This document shows, piece by piece, positions 1 to 52,700 of a DNA stretch of 64,000 nt. A program made the position numbers and the translations under genes. Origin of the DNA: Caecitellus pseudoparvulus. Lineage: Eukaryota > Protista > Bigyra: Bicosoecida. A model generated the notes under the pieces. The model was not told the origin of the DNA. It ran no database searches and worked only from the letters and a program-made list of their open reading frames with translations. The DNA lies in assembly GCA_965644315.1 (NCBI GenBank), contig CBFFRQ010000069.1, forward strand, positions 1,116,001 to 1,180,000, given 5' to 3'. Every line of letters begins with the position of its first letter. Within the stretch, counting starts at the first letter, position 1.

Positions 1-1
1 A

Positions 2-250
2 GGCGCCACCGGCCTGACGTTCAACGGGAACGCGGCAGGTGCATTCAGCCTGACGTTCACGAGCGGAAACTGGAACACCCCCCAGACAGTCACCGTCGCC
101 AGCGCCGACGACAACGTAGACTCGTCAGGCGGCACTGGCTCCTACACTGCCTCTCTCACTGTCAGTGCCAGCTCGGCAGATTCGTTCTACAACTCTGCCA
201 CCATCTCCCCCGGCACTGGCATCACGGCCACCGTCTTTGAAGATGAGAGC
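2..250 (+). other. Calx-beta-like / Ig-like adhesin domain (C-terminal part)
   Basis: Motif LTFTSGNWNTPQTVTVASADD...ITATVFEDE resembles the LTFTxxNWNxPQTVTVxAxDD signature of Calx-beta-like repeats (recognised by eye). Confidence 0.7.
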
Positions 251-30900: not shown

Positions 30901-31394
30901 AATCTGTGAAGATGCACACTTTCATTCTACCTCGCCAGCCCGCTCTGTTGGCGGCTTCCGAAACGCGGGAATCAATTACTCCTCAGCAAGTGCTGCTGGC
31001 CACTGAGAGCGGCTCAGTGATGGCGCTGCCTGCCCCACTGCTGGACCCTCGTCGCCCATTGGCCCCTCCGTCTGCCCACGAGAAAGCAGAGAAGCTGCTC
31101 CAATACGCACCGTTCCTGCCACTGTCCCACGAGGCCTTTGTGACGAAGGATGTGGTTGTGCCGCACATCACCCACCTGATTAGCACACCTACACAGCTGG
31201 AGTCAACGACCCTTGTCGTTGTTTGTGGACTGGACATTTTTGCCGGCAGACACCACCCCGTGAAAGCCTTTGATGTGTTGCCAGAAGATTTTAACGCGCC
31301 CCTTCTCATAGTGCTCATGGTGGCGCTTGCCGTCGGGACCGTGTACTTGCAACGACTGCTCAGGAGCAAGCAGCTGCGTGACAGCTGGAAGTAG
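27965..31394 (+). CDS. EMC1: ER membrane protein complex subunit 1, 3 exons, ~1084 aa
   Basis: Exons 27965-28187, 28292-28506, 28578-31394 (GTAAGT and GTGAGT donors). Signal peptide, then EVGQHEW..HVG and PQQ-like ARTGNLKWR. C-terminal EMC1 motifs DDSVLIRYLSPH, LIDAVSG, LLDPRRP, TQLESTTLVVVCGLDIF..P.KAFDVLPEDFN + TM + W. Confidence 0.93.
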
Positions 31395-31746
31395 CAAGCA
31401 GCCCTTGCAGGCAGGCGAATTCATGTGTGGTTCGCCCAGTGACAGTTTACATGGCCCCGGTCCCTCCCGTGCCGCAGCACCGCTCCACCTTTCCGTTGCC
31501 GCAAAGCCAGATCTCGAGCAAAAACGCAAGTCTAATAAGGCACAGAATTCCTGTGTGACCACCGTTGAAGCAAGCTTTGCTGCAGACACTCTCGAAGTGC
31601 CTGCTCTTTGTTGCGCGTGGTGCAGCTGCTGAAGCAGAGATAGGCTACTGCCGCACGCGTTTGAGGCCATGTGGCGCAGCACACGCTGCCTCGCACTCTG
31701 CGGCACACTGCTCCATTGCGGTCTCTCAATAGCTAAAGGTAGGATA

Positions 31747-34700
31747 ATGACTTCATTCTTGTTTTCCTTGGAGGGAAACGTGCTGCTCATGGCACTGCTG
31801 GCGATCGTGCATACTGCTGCGTTTCGTGTCTATGGTGTTTCGCCCAGAGCTGCAGCTGCAGCGCTCTCTCTGCCACGTGCACCCCTACCCGCCCCCACAG
31901 GATCAACACTAGAATCTGTCAGCCACCTAGAAGAGCATCGCTCAGGTATGCTTTGCTTGTGTGCAGCAGCAGCGCGTTTCCAGCAGCCTGAGCGGCACTG
32001 TGAGCACTTCCGCGTGCCACGCACTTGCAATGCGCAGGTCCTGGAGCGCCAGCTACTGTGGATCTCTTTGTCGCCTCCTCTTCTGCGCTCAGAGTTGATT
32101 TCACTCCACCAGAGGATGACGGAGGAGCATCAGTCACAGCGTTCAAAGTTGAGTGGGACACGGCGCCACCAGTTCAAGAGATTCAGGTGATCAGCACCTC
32201 CCTTGACCTGGGGCCAAATGAGATTCAAGAAGTCTCAACTTCAGGCATTCATGAAGATGAAGTCCAAGTGATCAAAACATCAGTCGATGAACTTCCCGAA
32301 GTCCAGATTGTCTCGACTTCTGCTGCGCCTGGTGAAGTGCTTGGAGGCTCTTTCTCACTCCTACTTGACTTGTCTTCACGCGGAGGGGCAAGGTTCACCT
32401 CAGGAAGCATTCCTCACCACGCAACGTCAGCACAGTTTGCAGCCCTGCTCGAGGCTATGCCCCCAATTGAACGGGCCAATGTGAGCCGGGCGGGCCCAAA
32501 TGGAGAGGGGGGCTACCAGTGGACAGTCACGTTTCTTTCACTTCACGGTGATGTCCCCGAGCTTGCCGTGGCCACATCCTCGTTGACTGGAACGGGTTCA
32601 GAAGTCAGCATTCGCACCGTTCAAGACGGGATGACCATCAGCGGCTCCTTCAAGTTGGCATTCCAAGGAGCAGAGACAGCGGCAATCCCTCACGACGCAA
32701 GTGACGCAGAGCTCGCTACGGCTCTCATGGATCTGGTGAGCATTCCGTCGGTAGAGGTAAACAAGGTGTTCGAGGATGCAAGCGGGGGCTCGGAGTGGGC
32801 TGTAACATTCAACAGCCCATACAATCGGGGAGACGTTCCTTCGCTGACAGCAGTCTCGATGCTGAATGGCCCGAATCCAAGCATATCCATTTGCTCGGAT
32901 GGCAGCCAGACTGGGATTTGTCAGAACACGACGACCCTGTCCAGGAGGGGAAATGAGCTGGCAGGCTCTTTCTCTCTGGCATTCGGGGGGCAAGAAACAG
33001 GCCCCATCCCTCACAATGTCAGCGCAGCTGGGCTCAAGGGGGCTCTGGAGAGCCTTAGCGGCATCGGTACAGTCGATGTGAGCCAGGGACCAGTCGATCA
33101 GACGGGGGGGTCAAGTTGGCAAGTCCTCTTTGCTACAGATGCCGGAAACCTCCCGCTCTTGTCTGCTCGGTCCTTCCTCACAGGCACGGGCGCGACAGTG
33201 CAAGTCAACACTGTTCACAACGGCACTGTACAAGAACAACAGCGCCTTTCGCTGGATCCCGCTGCTTCTGGGCAGTTTGGTATTGTGCTCCCCAGCCCTT
33301 GGTTTGCTGTGGCAGTATCCCCTGCCATTTGGATCGAAGCAGGCAATTGCACCCAAACTGCAAACAATGTCAGAGCCGCGCTGCAGGCGACAGTTAGTGT
33401 CGGCGCCGTGAATGTGGCATGTGCCTCTGACAGTCTGCTGGACATGGTGATCACTTTCATGGAGAAGGCTGGCGACTTTCCGCTGGTAGGACTGCAAACA
33501 GTCCCAGCCCCCAACTTCCCAAACCTTACAGTCCCCTACTCAGGACAGCCGCCGATGGTCACTGGCGTTGTTGATGGCACAGGTGTGAAGCTTGGAGGGA
33601 TGCTTGCTCTTTCCCACGGTGGAGAGCGAACTGGTTACCTCCCATTCAACGCTTCAGCTTCCCAGCTGCAGTCTGCGCTTCAGGCCATCCCATCGCTGGG
33701 CCGGGTTCAGGTGTCACGGGCAACGTCAGGTCCTAACGACGAGCAATCATGGTCTGTCACCTTTGTGGATGCAGTCGGGCCACAACAGCTGATAGGGCTT
33801 GATGCTGTTACTCTCACTGGCACGCGTGTTTCGGCCTCTGTGCGGAAGCAGCGAGAGGGAACCTTGCCTGGCTTCAATCAAGGTCCTGGAGGACTTGCCT
33901 TCGGCAGTGCCGTCGTTACAGACCTGACTGTATCAAGCTACATGATCGATAACCTCCGTCAAGGTGTCCCGTACTTTGTCCGTGTGTCAGCAGCAACTGC
34001 AGCAGGCTACGGTCCAGCCAGGGTCGCTCAGCCAGCAAGCGGCACCCCTTTTCCACAGCTCCCAGCAGGACCGCAAGAGGTGAGCTTGCAGTCAAAGTCT
34101 GGAGATTCTTTGGTGGTGTCTTTTCTGCCTACTCCTGACGATGGAGGTCTCGAGATTGTTGAGTACTTGGTGGAGCTCGATACAGCCCCATTTGCCGACG
34201 AGATTCAAGAAGTGGAGGTTACAACAGCTGTCACCAACGAGGTGCAGAGAGTCACGACCGCGGCAAACGATGAAGATGAAGTGCAGGTCATCCGGTTACT
34301 ATCGACTGCTTCTTCGACCAATATTGTCAATGAGGTTCAGGCCGTTGCGTGCAATGGTGTGGGGGGCGCATTCCGCCTGAACTTTGACGGCCACTTTACG
34401 GACGCGATATCGTTTGACGCCCCCCTTACATCGACTGGCCGCGGAGATTCTGTCGAAGAGGCCTTGGAGCGACTGCCTAACCTTGTCGATGTAATGGTTG
34501 AAAATTCTGGTGGACCCTCGGCTTCTCAGCAAGTGGCGTGTGCTGGCGGAACGCCACAGGAAGTCTTGGTTACCTTCATCGACACACTGCCTTTCCAAGG
34601 GGATGTACCCTTAATGACTGCAGACTTCGAAAGTCTGGAAGGGTTCAAGCATATCTCAATTAGTGAAGTGACGCAAGGCTCCGCGCCACTCTCCGGCAAC

Positions 34701-37700
34701 TTCGACTTGCACTTTGCCGGTGCCACCACAAGTATTGCCGTGACTGCATCTGCTGCCCAAGTGCAAAACGCCCTCACTGCCCTGCCCGCCATTGATGATG
34801 TCATAGTTGTAGAGCAGCTGAGCACAGCCTGCCCGTCCAGCGTAGGATGTGTGGATTGGCTTGTTTCTTTCACTGGCTCACAGGTAGGCGGCGATGTTCC
34901 CGCCTTGGAGGCCACGTGGGATACCCTGAAGGGAAACGGGGCCGCCGTTTCTATCTGCAGCGGGTCCTCTTGCACAGGCGCCCATCCCCTGCCATCTTCT
35001 GCTTTCCATGATGGAAATGAGCTGCGTGGCACGTTTTCTCTCTCATTGCTTGGCCACTCGACGCCGGAACTTCCCTTCGACGTGTCAGACACGGTGCTGC
35101 AGTCTGCTTTGAATTCTCTCCCAAACGTTGGATCCGTGAATGTGAGCAGAAGCATGCCAGATGAGCAAGGTGGATACTCCTGGGATGTGGAGTTTACCAG
35201 CCTTCCTGGGTCCTTCCCGCCCGGGAGCGGCAACGCCGCTCAGCTGGAGGTCGATGCGTCAAACCTTCAAGGGGTTGGGGCTCAAGCTGCCGTGTCCACT
35301 ATTCAGGACGGCTCACCGGGCCTTAGCGGCTCATTCTCTCTGGCGATGGGAAGTGACGAAACTGAACGTCTCCGCTTTGACGCGACTGCGGGCGAGGTGC
35401 GGGGAGCGCTTGAAAGGCTGACCAGTGTTGGCTCTGTTGAGGTTCAACGACGCACGACGTCGACTGGATTCAAGTGGCAGATAACTTTCGCGGGCTGTCG
35501 TGCATTGCCCCCCATTAACATTTTTGGTGAGAATGTGCAACAGTGCAGTCCAGGGAACCTCCCTGAGATTGCTGTAGACACGACCCAGCTTCAGGATATG
35601 GGCTTGAGTTCACCATCTGCGAAGCAGGTGCAGGCTGGGTCTGGAGATGGACCTGAGTACACCGTGCGCAGCTTCCGGGACCTCACAAGTCCCCTGCCGT
35701 ACCAGGTCCAATTTGAGGGCCTTCGACAAGGTGCTTTGTACTATGTTCGCGTCGCGACAAGGTCCCTGCTCTCGGCCGGCACTCGAGTACTGTCCTCCCC
35801 TCCTTCATTGGCTCCTTCCAACCAAGTGCCTTCCGCACCACCAGCCCCCGCACTGAGCTCTTCGACACCAAACTCCCTCTTCTTGAACTGGGAAGCACCC
35901 TTGCACACTGGAGGAGCACCGATCACCGGCTATCAGCTTCAGATGAACACCTGGGCGGGCGGGGAAGAGTGGCAGCTTGTGTACGACGGAACACTCGCTG
36001 CTAGCACGCGAAGTGCAGAGGTGTCAAAGCCTATGATTGAGGCTGGTAGACGGTATCGATTTCGAGTATTGGCTATGAACAGTGTTGGGTCATCTCTGCC
36101 TTCAGAAGTGGGAATTTTTGCAGCACGGGCCCCAGTGGAGCCGATGCCACCTCCTTTGCCTCAACCGTGGACCGGGACAGGCCACGGGCTTCCTCAAATC
36201 TCCGGTGATGCTGTGGTCGCAGCATTGCTTTCACCACCGCACGACAATGGAGGATCACAAGTGCTGGACTTTAGTGTCAAAGTTGTCGGTGCAGGCTTGC
36301 AGACCGCAACAGAAGCCACCATGGGTGACCTTGAGCAGCAGTTGGTGCGCGTGGACTTGTCGCATGGCACTTCCGGGGTGTTCCGTCTGAGTTACGGGGA
36401 ATGGGAAACGCGAGCGCTCTCTGTTTCTAACATTTCGCAGCTCCTTGACATGAACGACGTCGCTGCAGAGTTTGAGGGCGCTTTTTCAGCAGGGGGGGGG
36501 TTCGGAGGTCTTGTACTAGCGACTGCAGCGTCCTCTGGACCTGTGCTGCAGGTGACGCTTACCTTCACAGGTGTTGGGGGGAGCCTTCCGAATCTGAGAA
36601 TAACTTCCGAGGATTTGGCCAGTCCTTCTGCTGTCTCCGTTTCGCCCGTTTCCGCAGGTGCAGGCCAACCTCTTGTGCAGCAGTTTGTAGCAACAGCCAC
36701 TGGTGTGCCTGCTGCCGCTTCGGTTGAGTTCCGATCCTCTGATGGACAATCGGCGATCGTGTCTCTCGATGACCCCGCTCATTCGGTCGCGTCTGCTTTA
36801 TCTTCGATGGGCCGGCGGGTTAGCTGCTTCATTCGTACCCCCTCCTCTGCCCAGCGAATCTACATCATCGTGACCCACGGTGGAATGCCCGTTACCGCCG
36901 ACCCGGCACTCTCCGCACTGGCGACAGGTGCTCAAGTGGAGACTACCGTGCTGAAGAAACGGAGCTTCGTGCATGTTGAGTACGGGTTGCTGGAGGGGTC
37001 TGTCTATCAATTGACTGCCCGAGTGAGAAACGCAGTGGGCTGGTCTGGGGAGAGTGGCCAAGCCAGCATCCTTGCAGCTTCTGCACCGTACGCACAACCC
37101 GCACCTTCCTACACTGATGTTCAACCAACAAGCATTGCCTTAGAGTGGGCTGCTCCTGGCCAAGACGGGGGGTCACCTGTGACTGGATTCAAGGTTTTCA
37201 TGTTCCCATCTGTCCCACGCAACACGGCCGCACGCCCACAAGCTGTCGATGTAGAGTCACAACGAGTTGAATTGTCTGTTACAGCCCCCACAGATGAGAT
37301 TCAGCGGATCGAAGTCAATGCTTCGAGTGGCTCTTTCTCCGTCTTGTACACGAGCAGATCCAGTGGAGCAGTGGTCAACGCTGGACCACTGGATGTACAA
37401 GACGGGCTCTCAAACGTTGCCCTTCTTCAGTCTTCCTTCCGAGCGCACTGCCGCCAAGTGCCGGAGCTTTGCAATGTTGTTGTGACCAATGGAGCTGGTG
37501 TGGCCCCACTGGCATTGCATGTGCAGTGGCCAAGTATTCATGGTGACATTCCCACGCTTGGCGTCATCGACGGCACTCTGGACCCGCAGAACAGCGTGTC
37601 CGCATCGGAGCTCGTGAGAGGTGGATCAACGCTTGGAGGTGACTTCACTCTGTCGATGGGAGGCCTACATACAAGGCACATCTCTGTGGCAGCATCAGCG

Positions 37701-40700
37701 AGCACTCTTCAGGCGGAGTTAGAGAGCTTGGGTTCGATTGGGCAGGTAATTGTGCAAGGCCCTCACAAGCTCGACGGCCACGGTTCGGTGGCATGGGACA
37801 TCTTGTTCGTTGACTCTGTGGGGAACCTCCCGCAGCTGCAAGTCTCGTCAGGGCGCCTCGAAGGGAAGAATGCCTTCGGTCGCGTGTTCACGGTGGTGGA
37901 TGGCTCAACCGCAGTTCTGGCTTGGGATGGAACAGGCAAGGCAAACACTCACTCCGCTTTGATCCATGGTTTAGTTCCGGATAACACGTACGCCTTCAAG
38001 GTTGTTCCCCTCAATGCTGCCGGCAATGGAGTGCCGTCTGCAGCCTCCCAGACGGTCGTGACTAGATCTGGCGCCTCAGCCGCTCACTCAACGGCCAGAG
38101 GTGCTGCGCTGCGCCAAGGCATGGCAGGGGTCGTGTTTGAGCAGCAGCAGGTGCTCGTCATGGCACAAGGCTCGCCGAGTAACCTCGTGGGTGCTTCTTT
38201 CAAGCTCCGTCTGGGAAGTCATGGCGCTTTGTCGGAGCCCATCTCGGCAGCTGCTAGCCCAAGTGATGTTGAGCGTGCATTGTCTGGATTGTCGTTCACA
38301 GATGGCGTCTCATCGTCGACCATCATGAATGTCAGGGTGTCACGCGCAACACATGAATCTGATGGTAGTGCCTTTACCATCACCTTCCTGGGAAATCCTG
38401 GAAATCTTCCAGAGTTGCAACCACTTGAAGAGCTTGGTTTTGCTGGTGGTGCTCACGTGCAGGTCAGGGAGTTCGTGGAAGGCTCTGCGAATCAGTTCGT
38501 CATTGAACCCAGAAAGGCCAACGGCCAAGTGGTCCGCGACATCTTGACAGCAGAGGGCTTCAGCGGCTCGGATGTGTTCCTTACCGAATTGTGGGACGAT
38601 GCCGAGCAAGGCGAGCAAGGGACGCACACTTGGGCTGCTGATGGTGAAGTGGCCTCGTACAACCCGCCTGTGTATGAGATCCAGCATGTCACGCTTCGCA
38701 CTCCCGTGGGGGCACAGGCAACTTCTTTCTTGTTGGAGTTTGGGAATGCGCTCTACCCGCTTGGTGTTCACACGACGAGCGTCTTGAACGCCTCCTCATC
38801 CGCGGGTGACCTGCAAACTGCCCTCCAGCTTCTCCCAGGCTTGGGGGCTGTTGACGTGACAAGGACTGAAACTTTGGGTACGCTTTCAACGACAGTCTGG
38901 GCTGTTACTTTCCTCGGTACGCTTGGAGATGTTCCGTTGATGCGAGGCCTCGCGGTTTCGCTGAGCCAGAATGCTTCCGTGCTCGTCACGCCCCAGCAGG
39001 ATGGCGTGGCTGAGGTGCAAACTGTGACAACCTCCTCGACAAGTCAGTACGTGCCAGAGATACAGCGTCTGTCTTTCTTGGGGTTCTCTGGGGATGTGTT
39101 TGACCCTTCTGGGCCTAGTGCAGTCTTCTCGATTGACTATGAAGGAGGAGCGGTGGATGTTGACACTTCCGTTGATACGCCTTCCTCCTTGGAGGAAAAG
39201 CTGGAGGCATTGCCCGGAATCGACGACGTGGAGGTGCTTTGGAATGTTCAAGATAGTGTGCTGGATGTTTCCTTCCATCAGCCCACGGGTGATGTCAGCG
39301 CGATATCAGCTTCGCTTCTGTCCTCAAGTGATGGGTGCGCCGCCACGAGTGCATGCAAGCTTGTCTGTGACGAAGCCCGCAAAGGCTCCACGGCCATGCA
39401 GGGCACTTTTGTTCTGGCCTTCGGTGAAGGTGATGGGAGTGTCTCGGGCAGTATTCGACATGATGCTACTGCCGCCGAGGTGCAGTCCGCGCTGGATTCA
39501 CTGGCGCCCATTGGTGGCACAGCAGTGCAACGGCACCGCTTTGGATCGAATGGCTTCAGATGGACTGTCACATTTATCAAGAACGCGGGAAATCTTCCAA
39601 TGCTGCAGGCACTGCCCCAAGTGCATGAGATCCAGAGGATTGAATTGACGGGGGGCAGCCCGACGCCGATTCAAGGCGGCTTCTCACTTCTACTTGGACA
39701 CGAAAGAACTGCTGTCCTTCCTTTCGATGCGACGGCAGATGAAGTGAAGAACGAACTGCAAGGCCTGAACGCCCTGCACCATGTCGAGGTCTCGAGACAA
39801 GGGCCCATCGGAAACGGCCAGTTTTCTTGGACAGTCACGTTCCGGGACCCTGCGGGGGACGTGCCAGCGCTTCAAGCGGATGGAACTCACCTGCAGGGCT
39901 CCTCCGCCGAAATCACCGTTGAGACTCTGGAGGAAGGAGTGTCCAGAAGTCTTGTAGGCCCACAGGCGTCAGTGCGCGTCGAAGAGCGCGTCGCTGGCCT
40001 TCCAAGCTACACAGGAAGGTACACCCCTGCTCAAGTCGGGCCGTACTTCCTGGCGGTGCGCCAACTCCTGCCGGGGGGCCTCCAAGCGAGCTACTATGAC
40101 AACCAGTGGCTTCAAGGGGCGGCATCAATGACTCGCACAGACCCTGTCATTGACTTCAACTGGGGCACAGGTCTGGTCACTCATTTTGGTAGAGACTATG
40201 TCTCTGCAAGGTGGCACGGGAAAATCGTGCATGCCCGCTCAGAGGTTGTAGCTCTGCACCTTTCTGGAGACGAGGGATTCCGCCTTTACTTTGACCATGA
40301 ACTCGTCATTGACAGGTGGGACTCATGCTGCTCGCCAGCCCATGCCAAGGTAAACTTCACGGCGAAGGCTTTCCACGACTTGAAGGTCGAGTTTCGGGAG
40401 CAGCTAGGGCCAGCATTCATCAGGTTGCAGTGGACTTCAGACACACTGCCACTGGAAGTTATTCCTCCAACAGCACTGTACTCGGCTGAACACATTCTTG
40501 GTTCACCGTTCAGCCTTGAGGTAGTGCCGGGTGCTGCCGACTACCCGTTCACTGATGCGAATGGTGCCGGCCTGTCCCACGCTGTGGCTGGGGTCACCTC
40601 TAGCTTCATTATTCAGGCAAAAGACTCTGTCGGTAGCAACAAGACTTCTGGTGGTGATTCCTTCTCTGTTACATTGGAAGGGGGCGCAGGCCCCATCCCG

Positions 40701-43700
40701 CAGCAGCTCTCGCTCCCGACGCAGTACATCGGAGGCGGGCAGTACTTGGTCTCATACACGACCACACTGTCAGGCAACTATTCCCTGAGCATTCTCGCAG
40801 GGGTGAGTAAAGGGTCGCTGACTTCTTCTGGTCAGCACATTCAGTGTGGCCTCGGAAGTGAATTTGCTTGCAGTCCTTTCAATGTTGTGGTTGCACCCGG
40901 AGCCACCACAGCAAGGACATCCGACGCTCTTTCAGGCGATGGGCTTCTACGAGGAGTAGTTGGGGAGGTCGCGCAATTTCATATCCAAGCAAAGGACACT
41001 TTCGGAAACCTGAAGCAAAGTGGGGGGGACTCCTTTGAGGTAAATGTGGTGGGGGTGTTGACCAACACCACGTACGCTGCCGACGTGTCCGATCTCGGAG
41101 ATGGCACATACTCGGTGCAGTACACAGCACTTCAGTCGGGTGAATACGACGTGATGGTTTCACTCGATGAACAACGCGTACTCACTCTTGGCACTCTTCA
41201 GCCTGCCCGCATCAGTGTCGTGCACGGAGCGCTGCACGGACCAAGCTGCACAATGGCTGGCCCTAACCTTGATGCCTCAACTTCTGGTGAGGAGGCAAAC
41301 GTCACAGTTTATGCTCGAGACGCATTTGGAAACTTGCGCACCGGAAAGGGACAAGGTGACGGCCAATCAGATGTCTTCTGGCTTACAGCGACCCATGCGG
41401 CTACTGGGGCTGTGGTAGAGTCAAGCTCCGTGAGGCACACTCTGGCCATCCAGGCAGATGGAGGCACATTCTCTATCGAAGCTATGGGCAAGTCAACCCC
41501 ATCTCTTCCTTTCGATGTGCCGCCGACAGTGCTGTCTGCAACCATCCTTGAGTATTGTGGCGTGGAAGTCAAGGTGCAGGAGGTGTCTGCTTTGCCAAGC
41601 AGACAGCTTCTGCTGACCCCGCTTCGACCAAGCACAGCGTGGTATGCCATGCATATGTGGGAAGTGAAAAGTGCTGCCCTGGTCTTGGGCTTGGGCCTCG
41701 GCTCTGCTCAGATTGAAACGGCAGCCTCTGGGCGGGGGGTTTACCCCATGTTGTTCACTTTGTACCAAGCGGGGCCGTGGCAGATGAACATAACGACTCC
41801 AGAGGGGCGCCATGTCAATGGTTCACCTCGCTCTGTCAACGTCAGTGTGTCCGGACCCGATGCAAGGTCTTCGGAGGCATATGGGCAGGGCCTTGTCGGG
41901 GGCATCGCAGGGGAGACTCTGCAGTATGGGGTTCAAGTTCGTGATGCAGGAGCTGTCGAAGAGCAAGTTATTCTCATTGTCTCGGAAGATGTACCCGAAA
42001 GGCCTGATGAGTATGCTTTCACGTGCTTGTCAGCCACAAGCTTAACCGTGAGCATCGCAGGAATAGCTTCTGAGCCTGTAGCCAGCTCTGGGTCGACCTC
42101 GACAGCGACTGCATTGGCAGACGCGCTCTCCGCACATCCACTGCTGGCAACTGCAGTTTCAAGTGGCCGGGCATCTGTTTCAGTCACTTTGCGATCAGGG
42201 TCGGCCAGCCCATTGTGTGGAGCTGGAGAGCTCGTGCACGTGTCCGTGTCAGGCATGGGGCACCTGCCTGCCGTTCAAGTTCTGACTCAGCCGAGTGCCC
42301 GGGCTACGATGGTCCATGCTGAACATTCGAGGGGCACGTCGAATTCCCGCATGGAAACCGTTCTTGTGTCTTGCATGGCTGAATCAGGTTCTGTGACGTT
42401 CGGCTTCAGGGGCTTGTCAGTTAATGTTTCGGCGGCCGCCCCGCTGTCTGGATCAGCTTCATCTGTGGAAGGGCTTCTGAACTCCATGGGCAGCATGGGA
42501 CAGGTGCGAGTCACAGGCAACGGCACGCAGCTCTGCTCCACGGGCGATGTCTTCATTACATTCCTTTCGTTGACAGGCAACGTCGAGCTGCCAAGTGTGT
42601 TCCCTGCAGCCAACATTTCGGTGTCTGAGGTCCTCCCTGGGATCCACCCACACTCTGGTACGTTCCGACTTGCCTGGGGACACGATACAACGGAGCCCAT
42701 CCGGCATGATGCTTCTGCTTCGGAGGTCTCAGCTGCTTTGGAGGGCCTAGAAAGTTTTGGGGCAGCCACCGTGACAGAGACCTTCGTGGGAACGTTGGCG
42801 GGTGGGAGAGCAAAATCCGTGGCGTGGTCAGTCACGTTTGACAGGTATGGCTTCCCCGCCATGATCGGAAACGTCCAAGCACTTGCCCCGCTGTTTTCTT
42901 CTTCTGCGCTGCAAGCTCCGTTAGGGGCAACAAGCTCGCCACGGGTGACAGTCACCGTCGTCAACGAAGGCACACAGGGAAATCCAAGACCCCAAGGAGT
43001 GGACTTGCCCGTCGTCTCTGCGTCGGTCAACCATACGTCATTGGACACCACAGTGGGAGGGAGGGAGCTTGTCCATGTCAACTGCACTGCTGATAATGGG
43101 ACCTTGCGATTGATTTTCTCACATGTTGAAGTGGTGCTGAGCAGTACCGCATCCTTGAGCACGGCGTCATCCACGCTGAACTCAGCCTCCACCATTGCCG
43201 CGGTGGGAGGGGTGGTGGTCACTAGTGATAGGGACTCCTCAATTTGCTCTCCCAGTGGATCCTCCATCCTCATTGCCTTTGTCGCAGACGGAGACATGTC
43301 GCAGCTGGTTGCGGATGGGCAGGACCTGGCTCTGAGTGGTGGCCGTGGAAGCGTGGTTGTGTCCCTTGCCACCAATGGAGGTCTGCAAGTGACTCCGTCC
43401 CAAGAATCGGGCCTCTACAGTGTATCCTACACTCCAGTTCTGAAGGGGCAGTACATTGTCCAGACGTTCCTCAACGGGGGTCTTGTCTCGACTTCACATG
43501 ACGTTATCGTTACAGTGCTGCCGTCTGAAGTTCGCGCACATGCACCCAGCTGCAGCCACACCGCTCAAGCGTTTGCAGTCCAGGGAGAGGAAGAGACTTT
43601 CCTGATACAGGCACGTGATGTCCACATGAACGAGCTTGATGGACCTCTTGCTAGCCGTGATGAGTTCTTGGTTTTTGTTGATGGTGTTGCGGCTACCGAA

Positions 43701-46700
43701 GCTGGGCATTCTGGCGAGCATGTGCGCTTGCGAGCAGAAGTGTCTAGCGACGCACCAAACACTGATGGAACCTACAAAGTGGCATACCTTCCCACTAAGG
43801 CAGGGACGTTTAAAGTGCACGCATCTTTGCGGCGCTCAGGGGGCCTCTTGGCGACCTACTTCAGAAGCTCCGACTTTTCCAGCCCTGTGCTGGCCGACGC
43901 TGTTGGGAACCTAACCCACTGCCCCCCCAACCTCATTGAATGTGATTCAACTCGTGTGGATTCCGCCGTTGACTTTGATTGGGGGCTGCTGGCTCCCCTG
44001 CCGGACTTCCCCGGCGACTTTTTCAGCGTCAGATGGAGTGGAGATGTCCTCTCACCATACACAGGAGCAATCCGCTTCACAGTCATCGCAGACGATGGAG
44101 CACGACTCATCATCAACGGAAAAGCCATCATTGACCAGTTTGACTTTTCGGAGGATCGCATGGGAGGCACAATTGAACTTGTAGGAGGGCGCATGTACAG
44201 TATTCAGCTGGAAGTCAAGGAAAGCACCGGGCGCGCTTCTGCGAAGCTGGAATGGAGCTACCCGGGTAGAACTTCTCATACTGTCCCAAGTTCGCACCTC
44301 TTCTTCACTCGCCATATCGCACGCTCCCCTTCCACCGTGGTCATCGTCCCAGGCGCAGTTTCTGCGATGGCAACCACCGCGGCTGGACATGGACTGGTTG
44401 GCTCCGTTGCTGGGAGTGTGGCCTCCTTCACGATCACAGCCAGGGACTCCGCCGAGAACGTCAGGTTCAACAGTGGTGCGGATTCTTTCCAAGTAGAAGT
44501 GGTGGGGCAAAGCGATTGGGCCTTGCAAGGGCGCACGAACGATCAAGCAGGAAGCGCTCCGCATAGCGTGCCTGCCCTAGTGCAACCCGTTGACTGGCGA
44601 AGCTTACCTGGCACAGCCAGCATTCAGGCGGGGTCTTCTACGCTATACAGCTCCATTGACTTGACTTCACATGTTCAGCGGGGGGACCGCCTTGTTATTG
44701 GTCAGGAGTTGCACACAGTGTCATTCGAGGGACAGTTTGACTCACGTCAAGTGCCGCTGCAGCGAGCGCTTGGAGGAGACGCCGTATCAAACTTGACTGT
44801 CTTTGCTGCCGGACCTGCAACTGGAACTCACGCTGTGTCTTTCACTCCCACCGTTCGGGGGCAATACTCTGTTTCTGTGCTCAGGCCGGCCGTGCAGGAA
44901 GTGCAGTACTTCAGCATCTCAGCCTCGACGGCAATTCGCGGCACCTTCGCAATTGAAGCAATGGGGAAGAGATCGCTTGCTTTAAACGTGGCATCAACTG
45001 AGTCAAGCCTGATGGCATCGATCTCGGCCATGGGCCCCGCCTTCGCCTCGGTGACAGTGTCAGTGGTTCCTCCAGCGCTGAGTGCAAACATGAGCCTTGC
45101 ATGGTTCGTAACGTTCAGCCCAGAAGATGGCAATGTGGAGCTGCTGAGACTTGACACCCGTGGGTTGGTTGCAAACGATTTGTCGGTGGACATGCGAACC
45201 CTGACCGAAGGTGTCCGCAAGCAGCACATCTCCGGATCCCCCTTCTCCATGACTGTCGTGCCATCTGACAGCAGCGCCGCTATGTCCACTGCATTCGGAA
45301 GCGGGCTCTCCTCAGCCACTGCGGGGAAAGTAGCGAATTTCACCATTCAGTCAAAGGATGAATATGGAAATAATCGGTTGACTGCTCAGGGCCCAGAGGA
45401 CTACGTGATATTTGGCTCGCTGGCCTCCCCGGCGGACTCCAGCGTCGAGGCGCGAAGCAGTGGTTTCAACGCGACCTACCGCCACCTGGATGACGGAAAG
45501 ACGGAAGTCACATATGTAGCGAACGTTACTGGAGACTACATTATCTCCGTTGGTATGGTTGATAGGAAAGCCAAGTACCTGCTTCAAGTACGTTTGCCAA
45601 GGGGCCCACGAAGCACGGGCGAGTTCCTCTTCTCATGGGCCGGGCATGACTCAGTGCCTCTTGCATCTGATGCTGAGGCAGCTGATGTCAGTGAGGCCTT
45701 GTCTCGCATGCCTGGCATTCGAAATGTGGATGTGACTGGTGAGATTCACTCAGACGGGGCGGACTTTGAAATTGCCTTCATCCACGATGCTGCGCTTGAG
45801 CTGGACCTTGTTCTAGCTACTGGTCAGAGTTCACCTTCCGCGGCCATCGTGACCTTGACGAAAGTGCAGCCAATGTCCTTGCGCCACATCAAAACTCAGG
45901 CTCAGCCCATTCTCAACGAAGTGCAGACACTAGTCGTTCAAGGGGAACCTCATGACACCTTCCAACTTATGCGGGCAGGGCAGCGCACTGTCCCGCTTCA
46001 CATCGGGTCTACGAGCCAAGAAGTGCAGGATGCCCTCCACGCACTTTCATCAGTGCACTCCGTTCAAGTGGAGGCACTTCCCCCTGCAGGGAACTCATCA
46101 TCATGGCACGTTACGTTCTTGGCGCAAGCACTGGATGGGAGGCTTACCCACCACACACACCTCGGGCCGCAACCACTCCTCACAGTGCATGCCTCAGAGG
46201 ACAACGTCACCTCGGCCTCATTCAGTGCGCTTGTTCTTCCCACAGCTCAGCGAGGGGCTGCGCCGTTTCTTACTCGCGTACTCCCTTCGAGTCTTGCCGC
46301 TACGATGACGTCGGCGACAGAAGATGCAACACGAGGCTTAACCTCCGGCACCTATAACACCACTGCATCATTCCACATTGAAGAGCGTGATGCGTTCGGT
46401 AATCGCATCTACTCTGACCACGACGTTGAAGTGCAAGTTCTGAGGCTTACGAGGGGCAGCAGCATTGCAGGGTCGCTAGCGTTGCAGCTGTCTGGATTCC
46501 GTACACCCTTCCTCCAGGCTCAAGGTCTCAGCGCCGCAGCTATAGAGGTCGAGCTAGAAGCACTGCCTATAATCGGATCTGTCTCAGTGCTTGAGAGAAA
46601 TTTGTCCACTTCTGTGGTCGAGTTCGCCGTCACCTTCAATAGTGATGCTGGAGATCTGCCACCACTGGCTGTGGAAACGAAAAACTTTGCAACAGGCATG

Positions 46701-49700
46701 TCTGCCGAAATTCTTGCTTGTGAGCGATTCCAACACCAACGAGTAACGCTTTTGGCACCAAGTAACTCAAGCATTGGAGGAGAATTCGCCTTGGTCTGGA
46801 ATGGACACGAGTCCTCGCGGCTAAGTGTCGAGGCGAGCAATGAGGACGTGCGACGTGCTCTGCAGGCACTGCCAGGCGTGCTCTCAGCCCGCGTAGCAAC
46901 ACCACCCGCCTTAGAACTTGGACAAATCCGAAACTGGGACGTCTTTTTCGAGTCGGTCACCTCTCCGCTGTCTCTGCTAGTCCCTGAAGGCCGCTGGCTG
47001 GTCGGGTCAGGGAGCCGAGTGGTCGTCGAGGAGGCATGCCCGGCAGGGCACACTTTCGCCACCACTGCTGGGAGGCTGCCTCCTGCCTTCTACCTTCAAC
47101 TCTCGGGGCCTGAAACTGTGTCAGGTGTCGTGACCCCTGCCGGGGCCGGCATGCACCTTGCACAGTATAAGGTCCCGAGGAGCGGGGACTACAGGATGGA
47201 CGTCTCTCTGCTGACCCCAGGAGGGCTGCTTGGGGAATACTTCAGTAATCGATGGCTGCACGGGGCTGCAGCCATGAAACGGGTGGACAGCCATGTCAAT
47301 TTCTTCTGGAAGACTCTCATCCTTCCAACGGCAGAGGACTTCGTTTCCATTCGGTGGACAGGCTTCATTGTGTTTCCATTCAGTGAACGCTTCACCTTTA
47401 CTGCTCACGTCAATGATGGGTTGAAGCTTTGGATCGGCGACGAAGTAGTGATTGATGCCTTTGACCTTGCATTCAATTCCTCGACTCAAGGAGACTTTGC
47501 GGAAGCTCGAGGCACACTGTCTTTCAAGGCTGTGAAAGACCAGCCCTACCCTGTACAAATCGAGTATCGGGAGAACACTGAAAGCGCAGTGGCAAGACTA
47601 TACTGGCAGAGTTCCTCCCAGCCAAGGGTCCTGGTTCCACCTGCTCACTTGTACTATGCAGCTGAGCCCATCTCAGGTTCCCCATTCACCATTCAATCTG
47701 TGGGTATCGTCCCAAGGCGTCCACAGGGTGTCGAGGTGGAGGTGCTGTCCTCCCAGGGCTTGCGTGTACAGTGGACACCGCCACTGGAAGATGGAGGGTC
47801 TGCCATTTCTCAGTACCAAGTTCAATGGTACACTTCTCAGCCTGAGGTTGAGATTCAAACGCTTGTGCTGTCGGGTGTGTCCGGCAGCGCTGAGGCAAGC
47901 CTCTTCATTGTCAGCTTCCAAGGCTTTCACACTGAAGCAATGGCTGTGGGCAGCCCTTCCAATGCTGTTGAGGAGCAGATAGAACGGATGCCGGGAATTG
48001 GTGATGTCCAAGTTGTGTGTGCAACTCAGGAGCAATGGGGGCAGCTGCCTTGCCCTCAAGACACCGCCGGGCGTGTCGTGTATGAAGTGGCTTTCCTCTC
48101 GTACGTCAGACAAGTCCATGCGGCGCCCCATGGAAACTACGCAACAGCTGATGTACCTAATTTGGAGGTGCAAGGTGCCCTCGGTGTCGGCCAGCATGAG
48201 GTGTGCGTCTCAGGGCACGTGACCGTGGCTTGCAACGCATCGCAGTCGCGTGACGGGGGAGACTATGGGGGCTTTTGCTCCCCAGCTGCAGATAACCCGT
48301 GCGGCATCGTTTCAGCCAGCGACCTGCAAGCCTCTCACAGAAAACTGCAGTACGATATCCAACGCCTGTCACCGGGAGTTGAGTACTACGTGCGGGTATT
48401 GGCGTACAACTCGCAAGGCTGGGGTTTCGCCACAACTGCCAAGACTGAAGTCCCGCGTGATACACCGGAGCCACCACAAAGCCCTTCACTTCGTCTCTTT
48501 GGAGACGAGCCTGATGCTCTCCTTGTCCAGTGGGAAGCCCCCAAGAGCGACCGAGGAGCACCGGTGACACACTTCACAGTGTCTTGGCGGGCCGTGAATG
48601 AGTCAAGCTCACCCTGGCTTGAAGCCACATTGCCTGTTTCCGAAGCAGCATCAGGCATGCAAGGGCCGGACCATTTTTCCTACGTCATCAAGGAGCTACA
48701 GCCTGGATACGAAGTTGGAGTTACGGTTCAAGCCACCAATGCTGTCGGTCGCAGCTCTCGGGCGGCGACCATGCCCCACTCAGCGGTGCCATCTGCACAA
48801 GCAGATGTGATTGAAGCCGGGGGCGTTACAGTTGAAGCGCGCTATGTGGGAGCTGGTGTCTCGGTACATGAGTCCAGCAGCACCCTGCACGTTTCCTGGG
48901 TCCCGCCTCAGGATGCTCGAGGCTCGCAACTTGAGTCATTCAGAGTAACTGCATGCTCTGGTCCAGGAAGGCAGGAGATTCAGTCAGTTGCGATCGAGAA
49001 CTCTGAGGGGGGTTCATTTCAATTGCAGATCTCGTCCGAGACGAGTATTCCTTTGTCGTGGAACGCCACCGCAAAGGAAGTCAGGTCTGCCCTCCTCGGC
49101 TTCAACAGTGTTTCCGACGTTCAAGTTGAACGTGTTGATGTTCTACCTGCACCAGCTACGTCTAGTGGCGGAGTGCGCTGGTATCTCAACTTTGAAGAGG
49201 ACATGGGACAAGTGGCACCTGTGGTTGTGCATGATGAGCACTTAATTGGCTCTGGCCCACCAGGAACCCTCTCAGTGACAGTCCAAGTGGGTCTGACTGT
49301 CCAAGCTTCGGCGACAGCATCGTTGTCACAAGGCGGCCAAGAAATAGTTGTGAATACTGCTGACATGGTGGAAAGGGTGGATGAACTAGACTGGGTGCAG
49401 TACGGGTCAAGTTCGAGCAACACTGCACGAGTGTCGCAAGTTCAAACCGACGGGGCTTTGACACGGCTTCGCCTTGAGAGCAGCCTCGAACCAACGAGTT
49501 CTGGAAGCGGTGCACTACTGGTTGGTCAAACTCCACGTGGGAAGATGTGCGGGGGTCAAACGATGCGCTTCGTTCAGTTCGAGGCCACTCAGCCTCGCTA
49601 CGAGCTGACACTTGAAGATTTGAAGCCTGGAGCTTCCATTGCAGTGTCCGTCAGTACCATGAGCAACAGAGGGCTTTCAAAGAGCAGGCTTGCAACGCCA

Positions 49701-52700
49701 GGTTCCATTGCTCCTCCTTTGCAAGCACCCGATAGGCCACAGTCTGCGATGCTCTCCTCCCCTTCGTCTTCCTCTCTGCAGGTCAGCTTCCGTGCACCCA
49801 CATCAAATGGGGGTTCTCCGATCACTCAGTACATCGTCGAGTGGGACATGAGCTCAAACTTCAGCGGGGGACCACAGGCGAAGCCCTTAGGGCAGCACTC
49901 GATTGAAGTGCAACCAGGAGCTTGTGAAGTCACGCCATGCCGTCATGAGTTTGGCGGGCTAGAGACCGGACAGGAGTATTTCGTTCGGGTGTTTGCTTTC
50001 AACCGTTTCGGGTTCAGCGCTCGGTCTGCATCGCCTGTGCCAGCATCCATGGCGCCGACCACCTTTGCCATGCCGCCGAGTCGCGTTCTGGTGACACCGT
50101 CTGGCTCTGACGCTGTGAATGTGTCCTTTCCTGCTTCCGAGTCCGTGGGGGGGGCCGCGGTGTCCAAGTACAAGATTGAATGGGACGCGCAAGGCCCACC
50201 GCCTGTGCAGACAGAAGCCCTGTACTCCCTCCATGATGTTTTCACGATTGTGATCTCGGGAGCGGAGAACAACTTGGCCGGCTCGTTTCGCCTTGTACTG
50301 GATGGCGCTCGCACCGCTTCATTGGCAGCTGACGCGACACCAGCCGACGTGGCTTCGCAGCTGGAGAGCTTGCCCAGTGCAGGCAGCGTCGCTGTCTCGC
50401 GCCGCCAACTAGCCATGACGTGGGGCTTTGCGTGGGATGTGACGTTCCTTGCGTACAATGCTATGCCGCATGCTTTCACCCTGGAGAGCTCGCTCCGCGG
50501 TTCAAACCTGCACTCTGAGATCAAAAGAACTGTGTCGGCACTAGCAGGTTTTGAGCGACAAGTGGTCGCTTTGGAGAGTGGTGACACTCGCACACTAGTA
50601 GGGTCATTTGCGTTGAGTTTTGAGGGACACCAAACCGTGCTCTTGCCTGTGAACGCCTCTGCAGACCAAGTCCAGCGCGCAATCGATGCACTGGAGACCG
50701 CTGGGGAGGTGCTGGTGCAGTCCAGCACAACCATCACAACCCGCTCATTCACAGTGACGTTCTTAACTAGGCTGGGAAACCTGCCAGAGCTCATTGTTTC
50801 AGTACAGAACTGCTTAGATATGTCAGCAGGCAGTCCACGCCCAACGTTTGAGGTGGCTGAGATCCAGGCAGGGCGTTTGCCATCTATGGCGGGTCCCCTA
50901 CGTGGCTCAACAGAAGTGCATGCCCATACCGATGCACAAGCACCATACTCTGTCGTAATAGACGGGCTAGAAATGGGAATCGGATACCATTTCCGAGTTT
51001 CGGCTTGGAATGGAGTCGGTGACACGTTCGGCAAGTCCCAGTACGCCTCCCCTGCGCTGGTGACTCCTGCCCGCAAGCTCGGGCGCCCGGCAAGCGTTTC
51101 ATCCGAGCACATTTCTGCAGACTCCTTGATGGTCTCATGGCAGAATGCGGCAGGCACTGGTGAGCACCTCATTGATGCGGTAGAGGTGGAGTGGGATACG
51201 TCAACACCTGCCATGGAGCAGCAGCGACTGACTCTCTCTGCAACAGGTCAGCTGACTGGCAGCGTCGACGTGTCGCTCCGGGGAGACAACACTGCAACAG
51301 TCAGCGCGGCATCAAGTGAAGAAGAGGTGAAGCAGGCAATTGAGCAACTTGGGGGAGCAGGGATCGTACGGGTGACGGCATCCCCCGCATACCCCTCTGG
51401 GACGGCGTTTCATGTTCACTTCCTCACAGCCGTTGGAGATCTCCCAGAGCTGCTCGTGGTGAGGAACGGTCTTGAGGGGCTTGATGCCCGCGTAAGTGTC
51501 TTGACCCTTGTGGATGGTGCTGAGCCAGACTTTGACGGAGGGAGTGTTGGTGTTCAAGTCCTCCCTCTCGGACAGGTACTGGTCCCGGCTGAGCCTGAGG
51601 TGCAAATCATCTCTCTGGTATCTGAGGCAAATGACCTGCATGGTGACGTGTTCATAAACTATGCTGGACAAACAGGCGCATTCCCACTTGAACCAATCGA
51701 TACCGCCGAAGATGTCAAGGGCAAGCTGCAAGCGCTGCCCGGAATTGGGACAGTCGAAGTGTCGAAGCGAGTGCTGAACCAAACGACGAGTGTCCCGCGA
51801 CAGCGGCAAGAGGTTTCTTGGGCCGTGACATTTTCTGACGAACCTGGGATCGTCCAGCCACTCATCATGCTGCAGACAGACCCTGCAGCGCAGAAGGGAA
51901 CTGCTGTTGCTGGAGGGCGGGCTGGGAGCAGCCACGGCCTCAAGGGTACTGCAGCCGTCGCGACAGTCAGAAGGGCCACACTGGGTGCCGTCCCTCAAAG
52001 TGTCCACCTCCCTCTTGGACGAAGTGACATGACTTTCTTCGTGCGAGCAAGGTTTTTAGGTTCTCAGGGCCCTGGGCCGTTCAGCACTGCGCGCTTCGGC
52101 TCGAGGTTGGCGCCTGCCCCGCCTCAACCAGTGCAAGACGCGCTGGTGGCGAAGCTGGGACCTTCAAGCGTGGAGATCTCTTGGATGCCATCCCAGATAG
52201 GTACGTCAGCCTCCAGGTACGTGGTGCAGTGGTCTCCTTCAAGTTCTTTCGAGACTGGTGTTCAGGAAGCCAGTGTCTCGGCGAACGACACACTCGCGCA
52301 CGCTTCCGGGCGCTTGGCCACTGCCGTGCGCAATCTGGCATCCACGCCCACCTACTTCCGTGTTCTCGCTGCTTCCAGCATCGGCTACAGTAGACCGACT
52401 CTCGCACACCTTGATCCTTGGCATGCAGCCCAAACGTTTACCCTCTCGCTGACAAGCTCAGTCCCAGAGAATGGCACCTTCCAGCTTGAGGCTGGAGGTG
52501 TTCAGACAGCGCCCATTCCAGCATCATCGTCCGCGCAAGAACTTCAGGGCTTTCTGGCACAATTGCCCTTGGTGCCTTGTGTTTCTGTGCGGCTGCTTGA
52601 CGAGTCGGCTGTGGCGGATCCATTCGCCAACTTCACAACCAAACGGACCTGGACCCTGCACTTCCACTGTCAAGAAAAGAACTCTACGACATCGCTGGCA

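What the first reader, a model, noticed from the sequence alone, without database searches (positions are those of the whole stretch)
32170..35640. Bracket-paired strand complementation: n clustered EVQ strands followed by exactly n strand-less modules
Seen: the ~100-aa module normally reads E(V/I)Q.I....GG.F.L.F.G..T..I...A.A..V..AL..L..IG.V.V.R....W.VTF....GD(V/L)P.L.....L.G....V.V....G. Inside FN3 #1, four EIQ/EVQ strands occur back to back (32170-32330). Four modules lacking that strand follow (~32340, 32640, 32960, 33590), while the module at ~33225 carries its own EQQ strand. FN3 #2 repeats this 4:4 (strands 34200-34350; modules ~34360, 34690, 35020, 35320) and FN3 #5 does it 2:2 (~37255-37900). 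Inference: each module is inserted after the first strand of the previous one, so the chain runs out and returns. That would build a two-chain side branch projecting from the FN3 backbone, i.e. a branched bottle-brush architecture from one polypeptide.
Basis: partly seen in the sequence, partly recalled or inferred. Interest (0 to 1): 0.9.

Follow-up and report, generated by a model that had tools for sequence, protein, structure and literature searches.

The report
Nested strand-donating domains branching off FN3
In a giant secreted protein of a protist, groups of four small domains are threaded inside one another: the chain first lays down one strand for each domain, then returns and builds the rest. 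Models predict a double-tethered side arm that starts and ends in one loop of a fibronectin-type domain, an unusual way to build a branched protein.

Summary
An open frame of more than 10,665 aa (32004 to the window end, eukaryotic) holds FN3 domains split in the C-C' loop. FN3 #1 and FN3 #2 each carry four E-V/I-Q strands about 13 residues apart, followed by four ~100-aa modules that have no first strand of their own. The whole 587-aa unit is conserved at 30-40% identity in 27 aligned homologues.

AlphaFold2 with that alignment gives confident models (pLDDT 88.8 and 90.8).
- Whole FN3 domains from the PDB superpose on the two rejoined halves (Z 12-14).
- Single-domain PDB matches span strand 4 + module 1, strand 3 + module 2, strand 2 + module 3 and strand 1 + module 4. 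That is last-in-first-out pairing.
- ESMFold2, without an alignment, docks strands 1-3 in trans onto modules 2-4 (ipSAE 0.64, best control 0.03).
- A cysteine pair linking strand 1 to module 4 is gained and lost together across homologues.

The module is homologous to the C-terminal-extension domain of mycobacteriophage Bxb1. By sequence, Bxb1 gp23 carries a 3-deep nest split at a different point. I rate it a new variant of nested domain insertion.

The parts
32004..63998 (+). Open frame of a giant secreted protein, more than 10,665 aa. It runs off the window end. About 14 split and about 10 intact FN3 domains, and 43-44 modules.
32040..32174 (+). FN3 #1, N-part (strands A-B-C)
32178..32321 (+). 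Unit 1 strand cluster. Four E-I/V-Q first strands starting at 32178, 32220, 32259 and 32298.
   Evidence: matrix scores 16.4-19.8
32340..33227 (+). Unit 1 strand-less modules 1-3 (32340-32633, 32637-32906, 32955-33227)
33234..33563 (+). Unit 1 embedded self-contained module. Its own EQQ strand is at 33234; the diverged module core was hit at about 33351-33497.
33591..33863 (+). Unit 1 strand-less module 4. By homology to unit 2 it is inferred to take strand 1.
33876..34061 (+). FN3 #1, C-part (strands C'-E-F-G)
   Evidence: profile 69-96 at 33942-34031
34062..34193 (+). FN3 #2, N-part (strands A-B-C)
34200..34355 (+). Unit 2 strand cluster. S1 34200-34223, S2 34239-34262, S3 34278-34301, S4 34332-34355.
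34359..34682 (+). Unit 2 module 1, contiguous with S4. It is the turn at the distal tip of the arm.
   Evidence: range 47..165
34689..34955 (+). Unit 2 module 2, completed by S3
   Evidence: (range 27..278; 9d93_Ma Z 13.4)
35019..35318 (+). Unit 2 module 3, completed by S2
   Evidence: range 13..378; lowest-error contacts
35322..35639 (+). Unit 2 module 4, completed by S1
   Evidence: range 1..485; cysteine pair in homologues
35646..35822 (+). FN3 #2, C-part (strands C'-E-F-G)
37086..38048 (+). FN3 #5 with a probable 2:2 nest. Strands at 37254 (weak) and 37296; modules at about 37326-37628 (weak) and 37632-37907.
31669..31738 (+). Probable first exon. It has a signal-peptide-like start and ends at an AG|GTAGG donor, in another frame than the giant frame. 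The exons were not joined.
   Evidence: read from the sequence; inference

Best explanation
The region encodes two paralogous 'arm' units of a giant secreted eukaryotic protein, probably from a stramenopile.

Each unit is an FN3 domain opened in its C-C' loop. The insert is a homotypic, recursively nested array of an alpha/beta module with the order b1 - b2 - helix - b3 - b4 - b5. Each module is inserted after strand b1 of the module outside it.

The chain therefore leaves the FN3 and runs outward, donating one E-V-Q strand to each module in turn, about 13 residues per module. It turns in the distal module, the only contiguous one. It then runs back, building the rest of modules 2, 3 and 4, and re-enters the FN3.

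The donated strand lies between b4 (WxVTF) and b5, so it is an interior strand of the sheet. Every junction between modules is crossed by two covalent linkers.

Shown in silico: the pairing register, the FN3 closure and the conservation. Inferred: that the arm is a stiff side branch; that folding proceeds from the inside out (S4+M1 first, S1+M4 last); and that the protein acts in surface or matrix adhesion, like other FN3-rich secreted giants. No ligand is known for the module.
For: - Conservation. 1,637 proteins match the unit and 147 do so at E of 1e-30 or better. Many align over residues 1-587. In the 28-row alignment the four strands each keep a position-specific flavour, and three of their Q residues are at least 90% conserved.
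- AF2 models. pLDDT 88.8 with pTM 0.66, and pLDDT 90.8 with pTM 0.72.
- FN3 closure. Z 12-14.2, rmsd about 2 A, model range 1..587.
- Register. All 50 matches fall into the four last-in-first-out range classes. An Atlas two-module protein aligns over model residues 74-397, starting at S3 and skipping module 1.
- Independent predictor. ESMFold2 without an alignment gives ipSAE 0.64/0.65/0.64 against a best control of 0.03. The mark was reached by 51 of 78 solved complexes and 2 of 108 mismatched pairs. The runs share at least 83% of contacts and the partner's pLDDT is at least 74. The lowest-error contacts put S2 against b4 and b5 of module 3. The interface covers b4 and b5 of modules 2, 3 and 4 and nothing in module 1.
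- Cysteine pair. A Cys at S1+8 and a Cys just before b5 of module 4 are both present in 13 homologues, both absent in 11, and never mixed. The tree needs two coordinated changes.
- Bracket grammar across the family.
- Precedent. The homologous Bxb1 gp23 shows a nest by sequence.
Against: - All structural evidence is prediction. No coordinates were available to me, so the register rests on first and last aligned residues, on the contact list, and on covariation.
- The calibration of the complex test is for separate proteins, not for a peptide cut from a chain.
- The cysteine covariation amounts to only two evolutionary events.
- Unit 1 was not folded.
- Split FN3s that hold two tandem self-contained modules (SMSM, 38 cases) show that nesting is not strictly required for insertion into the loop.
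- Strand detection is incomplete (1,232 strands against 1,745 modules). Only half of the FN3-bounded segments have equal counts.
Confidence: 0.8

Rival explanations
1. Intermolecular donor-strand exchange. The strand cluster of one molecule fills the strand-less modules of another, as in chaperone-usher pili, cross-linking the giants into a network instead of closing an arm in cis.
For: The strands do dock in trans in the complex test, so the interface itself does not need a covalent connection. The protein looks secreted and matrix-like.
Against: Equal numbers of strands and modules sit inside the same FN3 loop. The FN3 halves need the insert's two ends to be brought together. S4 is contiguous with module 1. 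The cis models are confident. The S1 to module-4 cysteine pair fits a fixed partner.
Confidence: 0.07
2. The E-V-Q cluster is an independent element, either a short beta meander or a spacer. The following modules are a truncated variant that folds without a first strand.
For: Only the sequence pattern itself. Predictors can over-complete familiar folds.
Against: Two predictors place each strand inside a module. The strand lies between b4 and b5, so its loss would split the sheet. The pLDDT of the module chain drops from 81 to 73-74 when the strands are replaced by unrelated peptides, which is a weak hint. Counts match across the family.
Confidence: 0.05
3. The strands do complete the modules, but in a register other than last-in-first-out, for example S3 with module 4.
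For: None found. The strand sequences are similar enough that sequence alone cannot assign partners.
Against: None of the 50 structural matches has such a range. S2 contacts module 3 at errors under 1 A. The S1 to module-4 cysteine pair points the same way. Linkers of 5-12 residues between strands could not reach non-adjacent modules.
Confidence: 0.03

Closest known systems
C-terminal extension (CTE) and CTE-like domains of mycobacteriophage Bxb1: gp14 capsid, gp19 tail tube, gp23 tail-tip cage/Dit (PDB 9d93, 9d9w). Also the phage Patience capsid protein (8giu).
   Same: Same fold and detectable sequence homology. Profile against gp23: E 3.5e-29. Against gp14: E 7e-5. Structural match Z 13.4, rmsd 1.8 A, 103 residues aligned, 32% identity. 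gp23 even keeps the N-E-V-Q ... GGxFxL motif. By sequence, gp23 is itself a 3-deep nest: two N-parts, one whole module, two C-parts.
   Different: These are phage virion decorations, not eukaryotic secreted giants. In gp23 the split lies after b3, so half a domain is displaced. Here it lies after b1, so a single strand is displaced. Depth is 3 in gp23 and 4 here, with 9-10 in homologues. The insert is not in an FN3. The CTEs are dispensable and immunodominant, and their function is unknown (PMC8704799). I could not read the Bxb1 structure paper, so I do not know whether the nest in gp23 was noted there.
Nested heterologous domain insertions: integrin beta subunit (PSI > hybrid > beta-I) and the pneumococcal pilus adhesin RrgA (from general knowledge, not tested here)
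   Same: One domain is inserted in a loop of another, and that one in a third. The chain goes out and comes back, and the inserted domain projects.
   Different: Those nests use different folds and are 2-3 levels deep. Here the same module is inserted into itself recursively, leaving a run of orphan first strands.
Donor-strand complementation in chaperone-usher pili (from general knowledge)
   Same: An incomplete beta fold is completed by a strand that lies elsewhere in the sequence.
   Different: In pili the fold is Ig-like, the missing strand is the last one, and the donor is another subunit. Here the donor is in the same chain, the strand is the first one, and the fold is a CTE-like alpha/beta module.
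FN3 domains with an insert in the C-C' loop, such as insulin receptor FnIII-2
   Same: FN3 tolerates a large insert at this loop. Chain 4zxb_E aligns to the rejoined FN3 with 91 residues across chain range 595-807.
   Different: The insulin receptor insert is largely disordered. Here it is an ordered array of 4-5 domains.

Membership tests
Fibronectin type III domain (split by insertion) | Seven-strand beta sandwich recognisable by profile | tested here: met
   Pfam fn3 matches the intact copy at E 4e-30. An in-protein profile finds N-parts and C-parts flanking the inserts.
Fibronectin type III domain (split by insertion) | The two halves form one FN3 fold in 3D | tested here: met
   Whole FN3 domains superpose at Z 12-14.2, rmsd about 2 A, 90-100 residues, model range 1..587. 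This is a predicted model only.
Phage CTE-like domain (Bxb1 gp14/gp19/gp23) | Sequence homology to the solved domains | tested here: met
   hmmsearch of A2 against PDB sequences: gp23 3.5e-29, gp14 7.2e-5, gp19 0.016. The reverse check with the module profile on the Bxb1 proteins also hits.
Phage CTE-like domain (Bxb1 gp14/gp19/gp23) | Same fold | tested here: met
   9d93_Ma Z 13.4 at rmsd 1.8 A; 9d9w_Aa Z 10.8; 8giu_1 Z 9.9. The next best matches have Z 7 or less.
Phage CTE-like domain (Bxb1 gp14/gp19/gp23) | Appended to a phage virion protein | tested here: not met
   The neighbouring genes are eukaryotic (EMC1, INCENP, CRAL-TRIO). Homologues come from an oomycete and from diatom-dominated clusters. 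The fold is shared but the context differs.
Nested (recursive) domain insertion | Each outer domain is made of two sequence segments that bracket the inner ones (last-in-first-out) | tested here: met
   Range classes, contacts, cysteine pair. Predictions and covariation only, not experiment.
Chaperone-usher type donor-strand exchange | Ig-like pilin lacking its C-terminal strand, completed by another subunit | tested here: not met
   The fold is alpha/beta and CTE-like, the missing strand is the first one, and the donor is in the same chain. Exchange between molecules was not tested.
Any Pfam family for the module | A hit above the gathering threshold | tested here: not met
   No family was found for the modules or for the Bxb1 gp23 and gp14 CTE regions.

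The most novel reading that the evidence does not exclude
Recursive self-insertion of one small domain after its first strand is a general building principle in a large stramenopile protein family. Depth reaches at least 9-10, with strand zippers at an exact 13-residue period. The result would be long, double-tethered hairpin rods that branch from an FN3 backbone, making a truly branched 'bottle-brush' from one polypeptide. Its folding order would be obligatorily inside-out. The same fold nests independently, at a different split point, in an actinophage tail protein, which suggests this fold is unusually permissive to self-insertion.
Probability: 0.55. Interest if true: 0.85.

Novelty: new variant of a known kind. 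Interest (0 to 1): 0.78.

Why it matters
Tandem-domain proteins are normally beads on a single string. If this holds, one chain can build side branches whose two ends meet in a single loop, with every inter-domain junction crossed twice. That bears on three things.

- Stiffness and force resistance. The mechanics of a double-tethered rod can be tested by single-molecule pulling.
- Folding order. The outermost domain cannot be completed until the whole insert has been made.
- How repeats evolve. The route would be insertion of a copy into the first hairpin of a copy, not tandem duplication.

It also gives a fold, and a eukaryote-phage relationship, to an abundant uncatalogued domain of diatom and oomycete surface giants. 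For annotation there is a simple rule: count the orphan E-V-Q strands to predict the depth of the arm.

Tried and rejected
- The genome search 'relatives' found no relatives, because the genome is eukaryotic and the collection holds only bacteria and archaea.
- Mutual information between strand and module columns in 29 sequences was dominated by gappy, variable columns and gave nothing usable.
- tblastn of one module against the phage collection found nothing at 1e-3. The link to Bxb1 came from structure and profile searches instead.
- Searches of this scan's earlier findings near the place and for 'EVQ' returned nothing.
- Literature searches for nested or recursive domain insertion, intramolecular donor-strand complementation and giant FN3 proteins found no description of this architecture. 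The Bxb1 structure paper (PMC12124961) is not held.
- Pfam gave only spurious weak hits (POTRA_1, Archease) for the modules.
- A recent DNA tandem duplication or an assembly artefact is rejected: no tandem repeats and the unit is conserved in distant homologues.
Full report
CONTEXT

The window is eukaryotic, although the genome tool's collection is prokaryotic. Neighbouring open frames encode EMC1 (28554-31391, +), an INCENP-like protein, a CRAL-TRIO protein and a long coiled-coil protein. The genome search reports no relatives among bacteria and archaea.

The finding lies at the start of an open frame that runs from 32004 to the end of the window, 10,665 codons. Just upstream, in another frame, an ATG at 31669 opens a signal-peptide-like stretch that ends at an AG|GTAGG donor. 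The protein is therefore probably secreted, with one or more small 5' introns.

Homologues include a 'secreted protein' of the oomycete Thraustotheca clavata and clusters dominated by diatoms and oomycetes. A stramenopile origin is likely but not shown.

CHECK OF THE OBSERVATION

- Strand motif. E[VILM]Q occurs 37 times against 5.8 expected. A strand matrix built from the homologue alignment gives 32 hits at 8 bits or more, against 1.3 in shuffles.
- Strand clusters. The two clusters of four start at nt 32178, 32220, 32259, 32298 and at nt 34200, 34239, 34278, 34332.
- Modules. An iterated profile of the ~100-aa module finds 43-44 copies in the frame. These include nt 32340, 32637, 32955, 33591 and nt 34362, 34689, 35019, 35322.
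- Extra module. The diverged module with its own EQQ strand sits between modules 3 and 4 of unit 1.
- Missing first strands. Consecutive strand-less modules are joined by about 8 residues, which leaves no room for a first strand.
- Split FN3. A profile made from the intact FN3 at 35829-36131 shows the FN3s around the clusters are split. The N-part stops at profile position ~55 and the C-part resumes at ~69. This happens about 14 times along the protein.
- FN3 #5. The 2:2 case is real but weaker, with one weak strand (ESQ) and one weak module.
- No artefact. There is no DNA tandem repeat in 32000-36000.

CONSERVATION

A full HMMER scan of 1.84 billion representatives with residues 687-1273 (window:34062-35822) found 1,637 proteins at E of 1e-3 or better and 147 at 1e-30 or better. 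Many align across all 587 residues.

In the 28-row alignment A1 (30-40% identity):
- the FN3 N-part, the four strands, the four modules and the FN3 C-part are collinear;
- three of the strand glutamines are at least 90% conserved;
- each strand has its own flavour. For example, S4 always reads E-V-Q-x-V-x-C-D-A before GGxF.

Units 1 and 2 of the window are collinear paralogues (33% identity over 490 residues, E 1e-46). Unit 1 differs by one extra self-contained module.

STRUCTURE PREDICTION

AlphaFold2 with A1 gave pLDDT 88.8 and pTM 0.66. All four strands are beta strands with pLDDT above 90.

No coordinates are exposed to me, so I read the topology indirectly, in three ways.

1. FN3 closure. 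A search of 48,161 PDB representatives returned whole FN3 domains (90-100 residues aligned, Z 12-14.2, rmsd about 2 A) whose aligned range in the model is 1..587. The two halves, 480 residues apart, therefore form one FN3. The secondary structure puts the insert between strands C and C'.

2. Register from a second model. I folded strands plus modules without the FN3 halves (A2, window:34188-35642). This gave pLDDT 90.8 and pTM 0.72.
   - In its numbering the strands are 5-12, 18-25, 31-38 and 50-56. The modules are 59-162, 171-258, 280-373 and 380-482.
   - The PDB-wide search returned single domains of 70-103 aligned residues in just four range classes: 45-48..163-166, 27-31..260-278, 8-16..372-380, and 1-3..482-485 plus one poor row at 9..473.
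   - These correspond to S4+M1, S3+M2, S2+M3 and S1+M4. No row has any other combination. Four rows (21, 35, 36 and 47) have rmsd above 5 A and are uninformative.

3. Atlas match. An ESM-Atlas two-module protein aligns 179 residues over model-1 residues 74-397. It starts at S3 and skips module 1.

INDEPENDENT PREDICTOR AND CONTACTS

I cut the chain after S3 and asked whether the 44-residue S1-S3 piece binds the remainder (S4 plus modules 1-4). ESMFold2, which did not use the alignment, gave:
- ipSAE 0.64, 0.65 and 0.64, against a best control of 0.03;
- the mark was reached by 51 of 78 solved complexes and 2 of 108 mismatched pairs in the tool's calibration;
- at least 83% of contacts are shared between runs, and the partner's pLDDT is at least 74.

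The lowest-error contacts put S2 (residues 18-23) against 331-336 and 368-373. These are the WxVTF strand (b4) and the last strand (b5) of module 3.

The interface on the large chain consists of b4 and b5 of modules 2, 3 and 4. Nothing in module 1 takes part, because its groove is already filled in cis by S4. The donated strand is thus interior to the sheet.

When the strands were replaced by unrelated peptides, the pLDDT of the module chain fell from 81 to 73-74. This is only a weak hint that the modules need the strands.

Caveat: the test is calibrated for separate proteins, not for a peptide excised from a chain.

COVARIATION

In 13 homologues a cysteine eight residues after the S1 glutamate co-occurs with a cysteine just before the last strand of module 4. 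In 11 homologues both are absent. No sequence has only one of the two.

On a quick maximum-likelihood tree the pattern needs two coordinated changes. One is a joint loss in P0019, inside the clade that has both. The number of events is small, but they support contact between S1 and module 4 independently of any predictor.

THE RULE ACROSS THE FAMILY

I reduced 152 proteins to tokens for strands, modules and FN3 parts.

- Strand-run length correlates with the length of the next module run (r = 0.59). Two hundred shuffles gave a mean of 0.03 and a maximum of 0.14.
- Among 250 FN3-bounded segments, counts lie on the diagonal or show a deficit of detected strands. Strands outnumber modules in only 9 segments.
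- Of 77 equal-count segments with n of at least 2, 76 are properly bracketed, against 21.8 expected for random order.
- Recurrent words are SSSSMMMM (15), SSMM (13) and SSSSMMMSSMMM (6).
- Some homologues carry 9-10 strands at an exact 13-residue period, followed by 9-13 modules. One example is P0013, strands at 2704-2810.

These proteins are related to each other, so the counts are not independent events.

WHAT THE MODULE IS

Pfam has no family for it.

By structure and by profile it is homologous to the C-terminal extension domains of mycobacteriophage Bxb1:
- gp23 tail-tip cage/Dit: E 3.5e-29, Z 13.4, rmsd 1.8 A, 32% identity;
- gp14 capsid: E 7e-5, Z 10.8;
- gp19 tail tube: E 0.016;
- phage Patience capsid protein: Z 9.9.

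More distant look-alikes, at Z 5-7, are FliD D2/D3, domains of phage sheath and nozzle proteins, and RRM-like ferredoxin folds.

The Bxb1 extensions are surface-exposed, dispensable and immunodominant, and their function is unknown (PMC8704799). The distal tail protein is said to carry three CTE-like domains (PMC13252515).

Scanning gp23 with my module profile shows:
- two N-parts (E-V-Q strand, b2, helix, b3; profile 3-47) at residues 282-328 and 342-387;
- one whole module at 403-523;
- two C-parts (profile ~40-98) at 507-565 and 560-606.

By sequence, then, gp23 is a 3-deep nest of the same fold, split after b3 instead of after b1. I could not check this against the coordinates, nor read the structure paper.

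MECHANISM, WITH SHOWN AND INFERRED PARTS

Shown in silico: the chain leaves the FN3 C-C' loop and lays down S1 to S4 outward, one per module. It turns in the contiguous S4+M1 module, returns through M2, M3 and M4, and closes the FN3.

Inferred:
- each junction is double-tethered, so the arm should be stiffer than a single-file array;
- folding should go from the inside out;
- successive split FN3s would give a branched, brush-like molecule;
- the role is extracellular adhesion or matrix.

The rival explanations are trans exchange between molecules, an independent strand element, and another register. They are listed with their evidence in the Rival explanations section. Together I give them about 0.15.

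COMPARISON AND NOVELTY

Nested insertion is known from general knowledge for heterologous domains (integrin beta, RrgA), and strand donation is known between pilus subunits. By sequence, the same fold is nested in phage gp23.

What I did not find described is homotypic, recursive nesting that displaces only the first strand, to depth 4 here and 9-10 in homologues, inside FN3 loops of eukaryotic giants. I rate it a new variant of a known kind. It is well supported computationally and untested experimentally.

LIMITS

- There are no experimental data and no coordinates.
- Unit 1 and the deep nests were not folded.
- No RNA evidence is available.

Noticed in passing
window 20169-31391: The genome is eukaryotic. 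EMC1 C-terminal domain (28554-31391 +), an INCENP/SAP protein (20169-22115 -), a CRAL-TRIO protein (25865-27289 -) and an 1,126-aa coiled-coil protein (22767-26144 -), all as long uninterrupted frames. The genome search finds no relatives in its prokaryote collection.
   Followed up: partly
window 2-18802 (+): A second giant open frame of 6,267 codons that runs off the window start. It has Ephrin_rec_like (cysteine-rich) repeats and no E-V-Q modules. The stretch 14-18 kb has strong GC skew (+0.13 to +0.18) and AT skew (+0.22 to +0.23).
   Followed up: no
window 31669-31738 (+): A signal-peptide-like ATG start that ends at an AG|GTAGG donor, in a different frame from the giant frame. A possible acceptor lies at about 32038. 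This suggests small 5' introns. The exons were not joined.
   Followed up: partly
P0013 residues 2704-2810; also P0004 2818-2979 and P0025 2795-2900: Homologues with 9-10 E-V-Q strands at an almost exact 13-residue period after an FN3 N-part, followed by 9-13 detected modules. These are candidates for very deep nests and long arms.
   Followed up: partly
L001 10928-12985 (Bxb1 gp23, residues 258-620): By profile coordinates, the three CTE-like domains of the phage distal tail protein are nested as N1 N2 [whole module 3] C2 C1, split after the third strand. Not checked against PDB 9d93 coordinates.
   Followed up: partly
window 55872-57165: Another first-reader note (s1-641894) reports a four-level 'matryoshka' here. 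My maps show an FN3 N-part at 55875-56015, a strand at 56034, modules at 56184 and 56712, and an FN3 C-part at 57045-57134. This fits a further nested unit with an extra insert between the modules.
   Followed up: no
window 38100-47700 (residues ~2040-5230 of the giant frame): A long stretch without FN3 domains. The modules there mostly carry their own strand (1:1), with at least one 2:2 pair (strands at 39012 and 39057). Large intervals between modules match none of my profiles.
   Followed up: no
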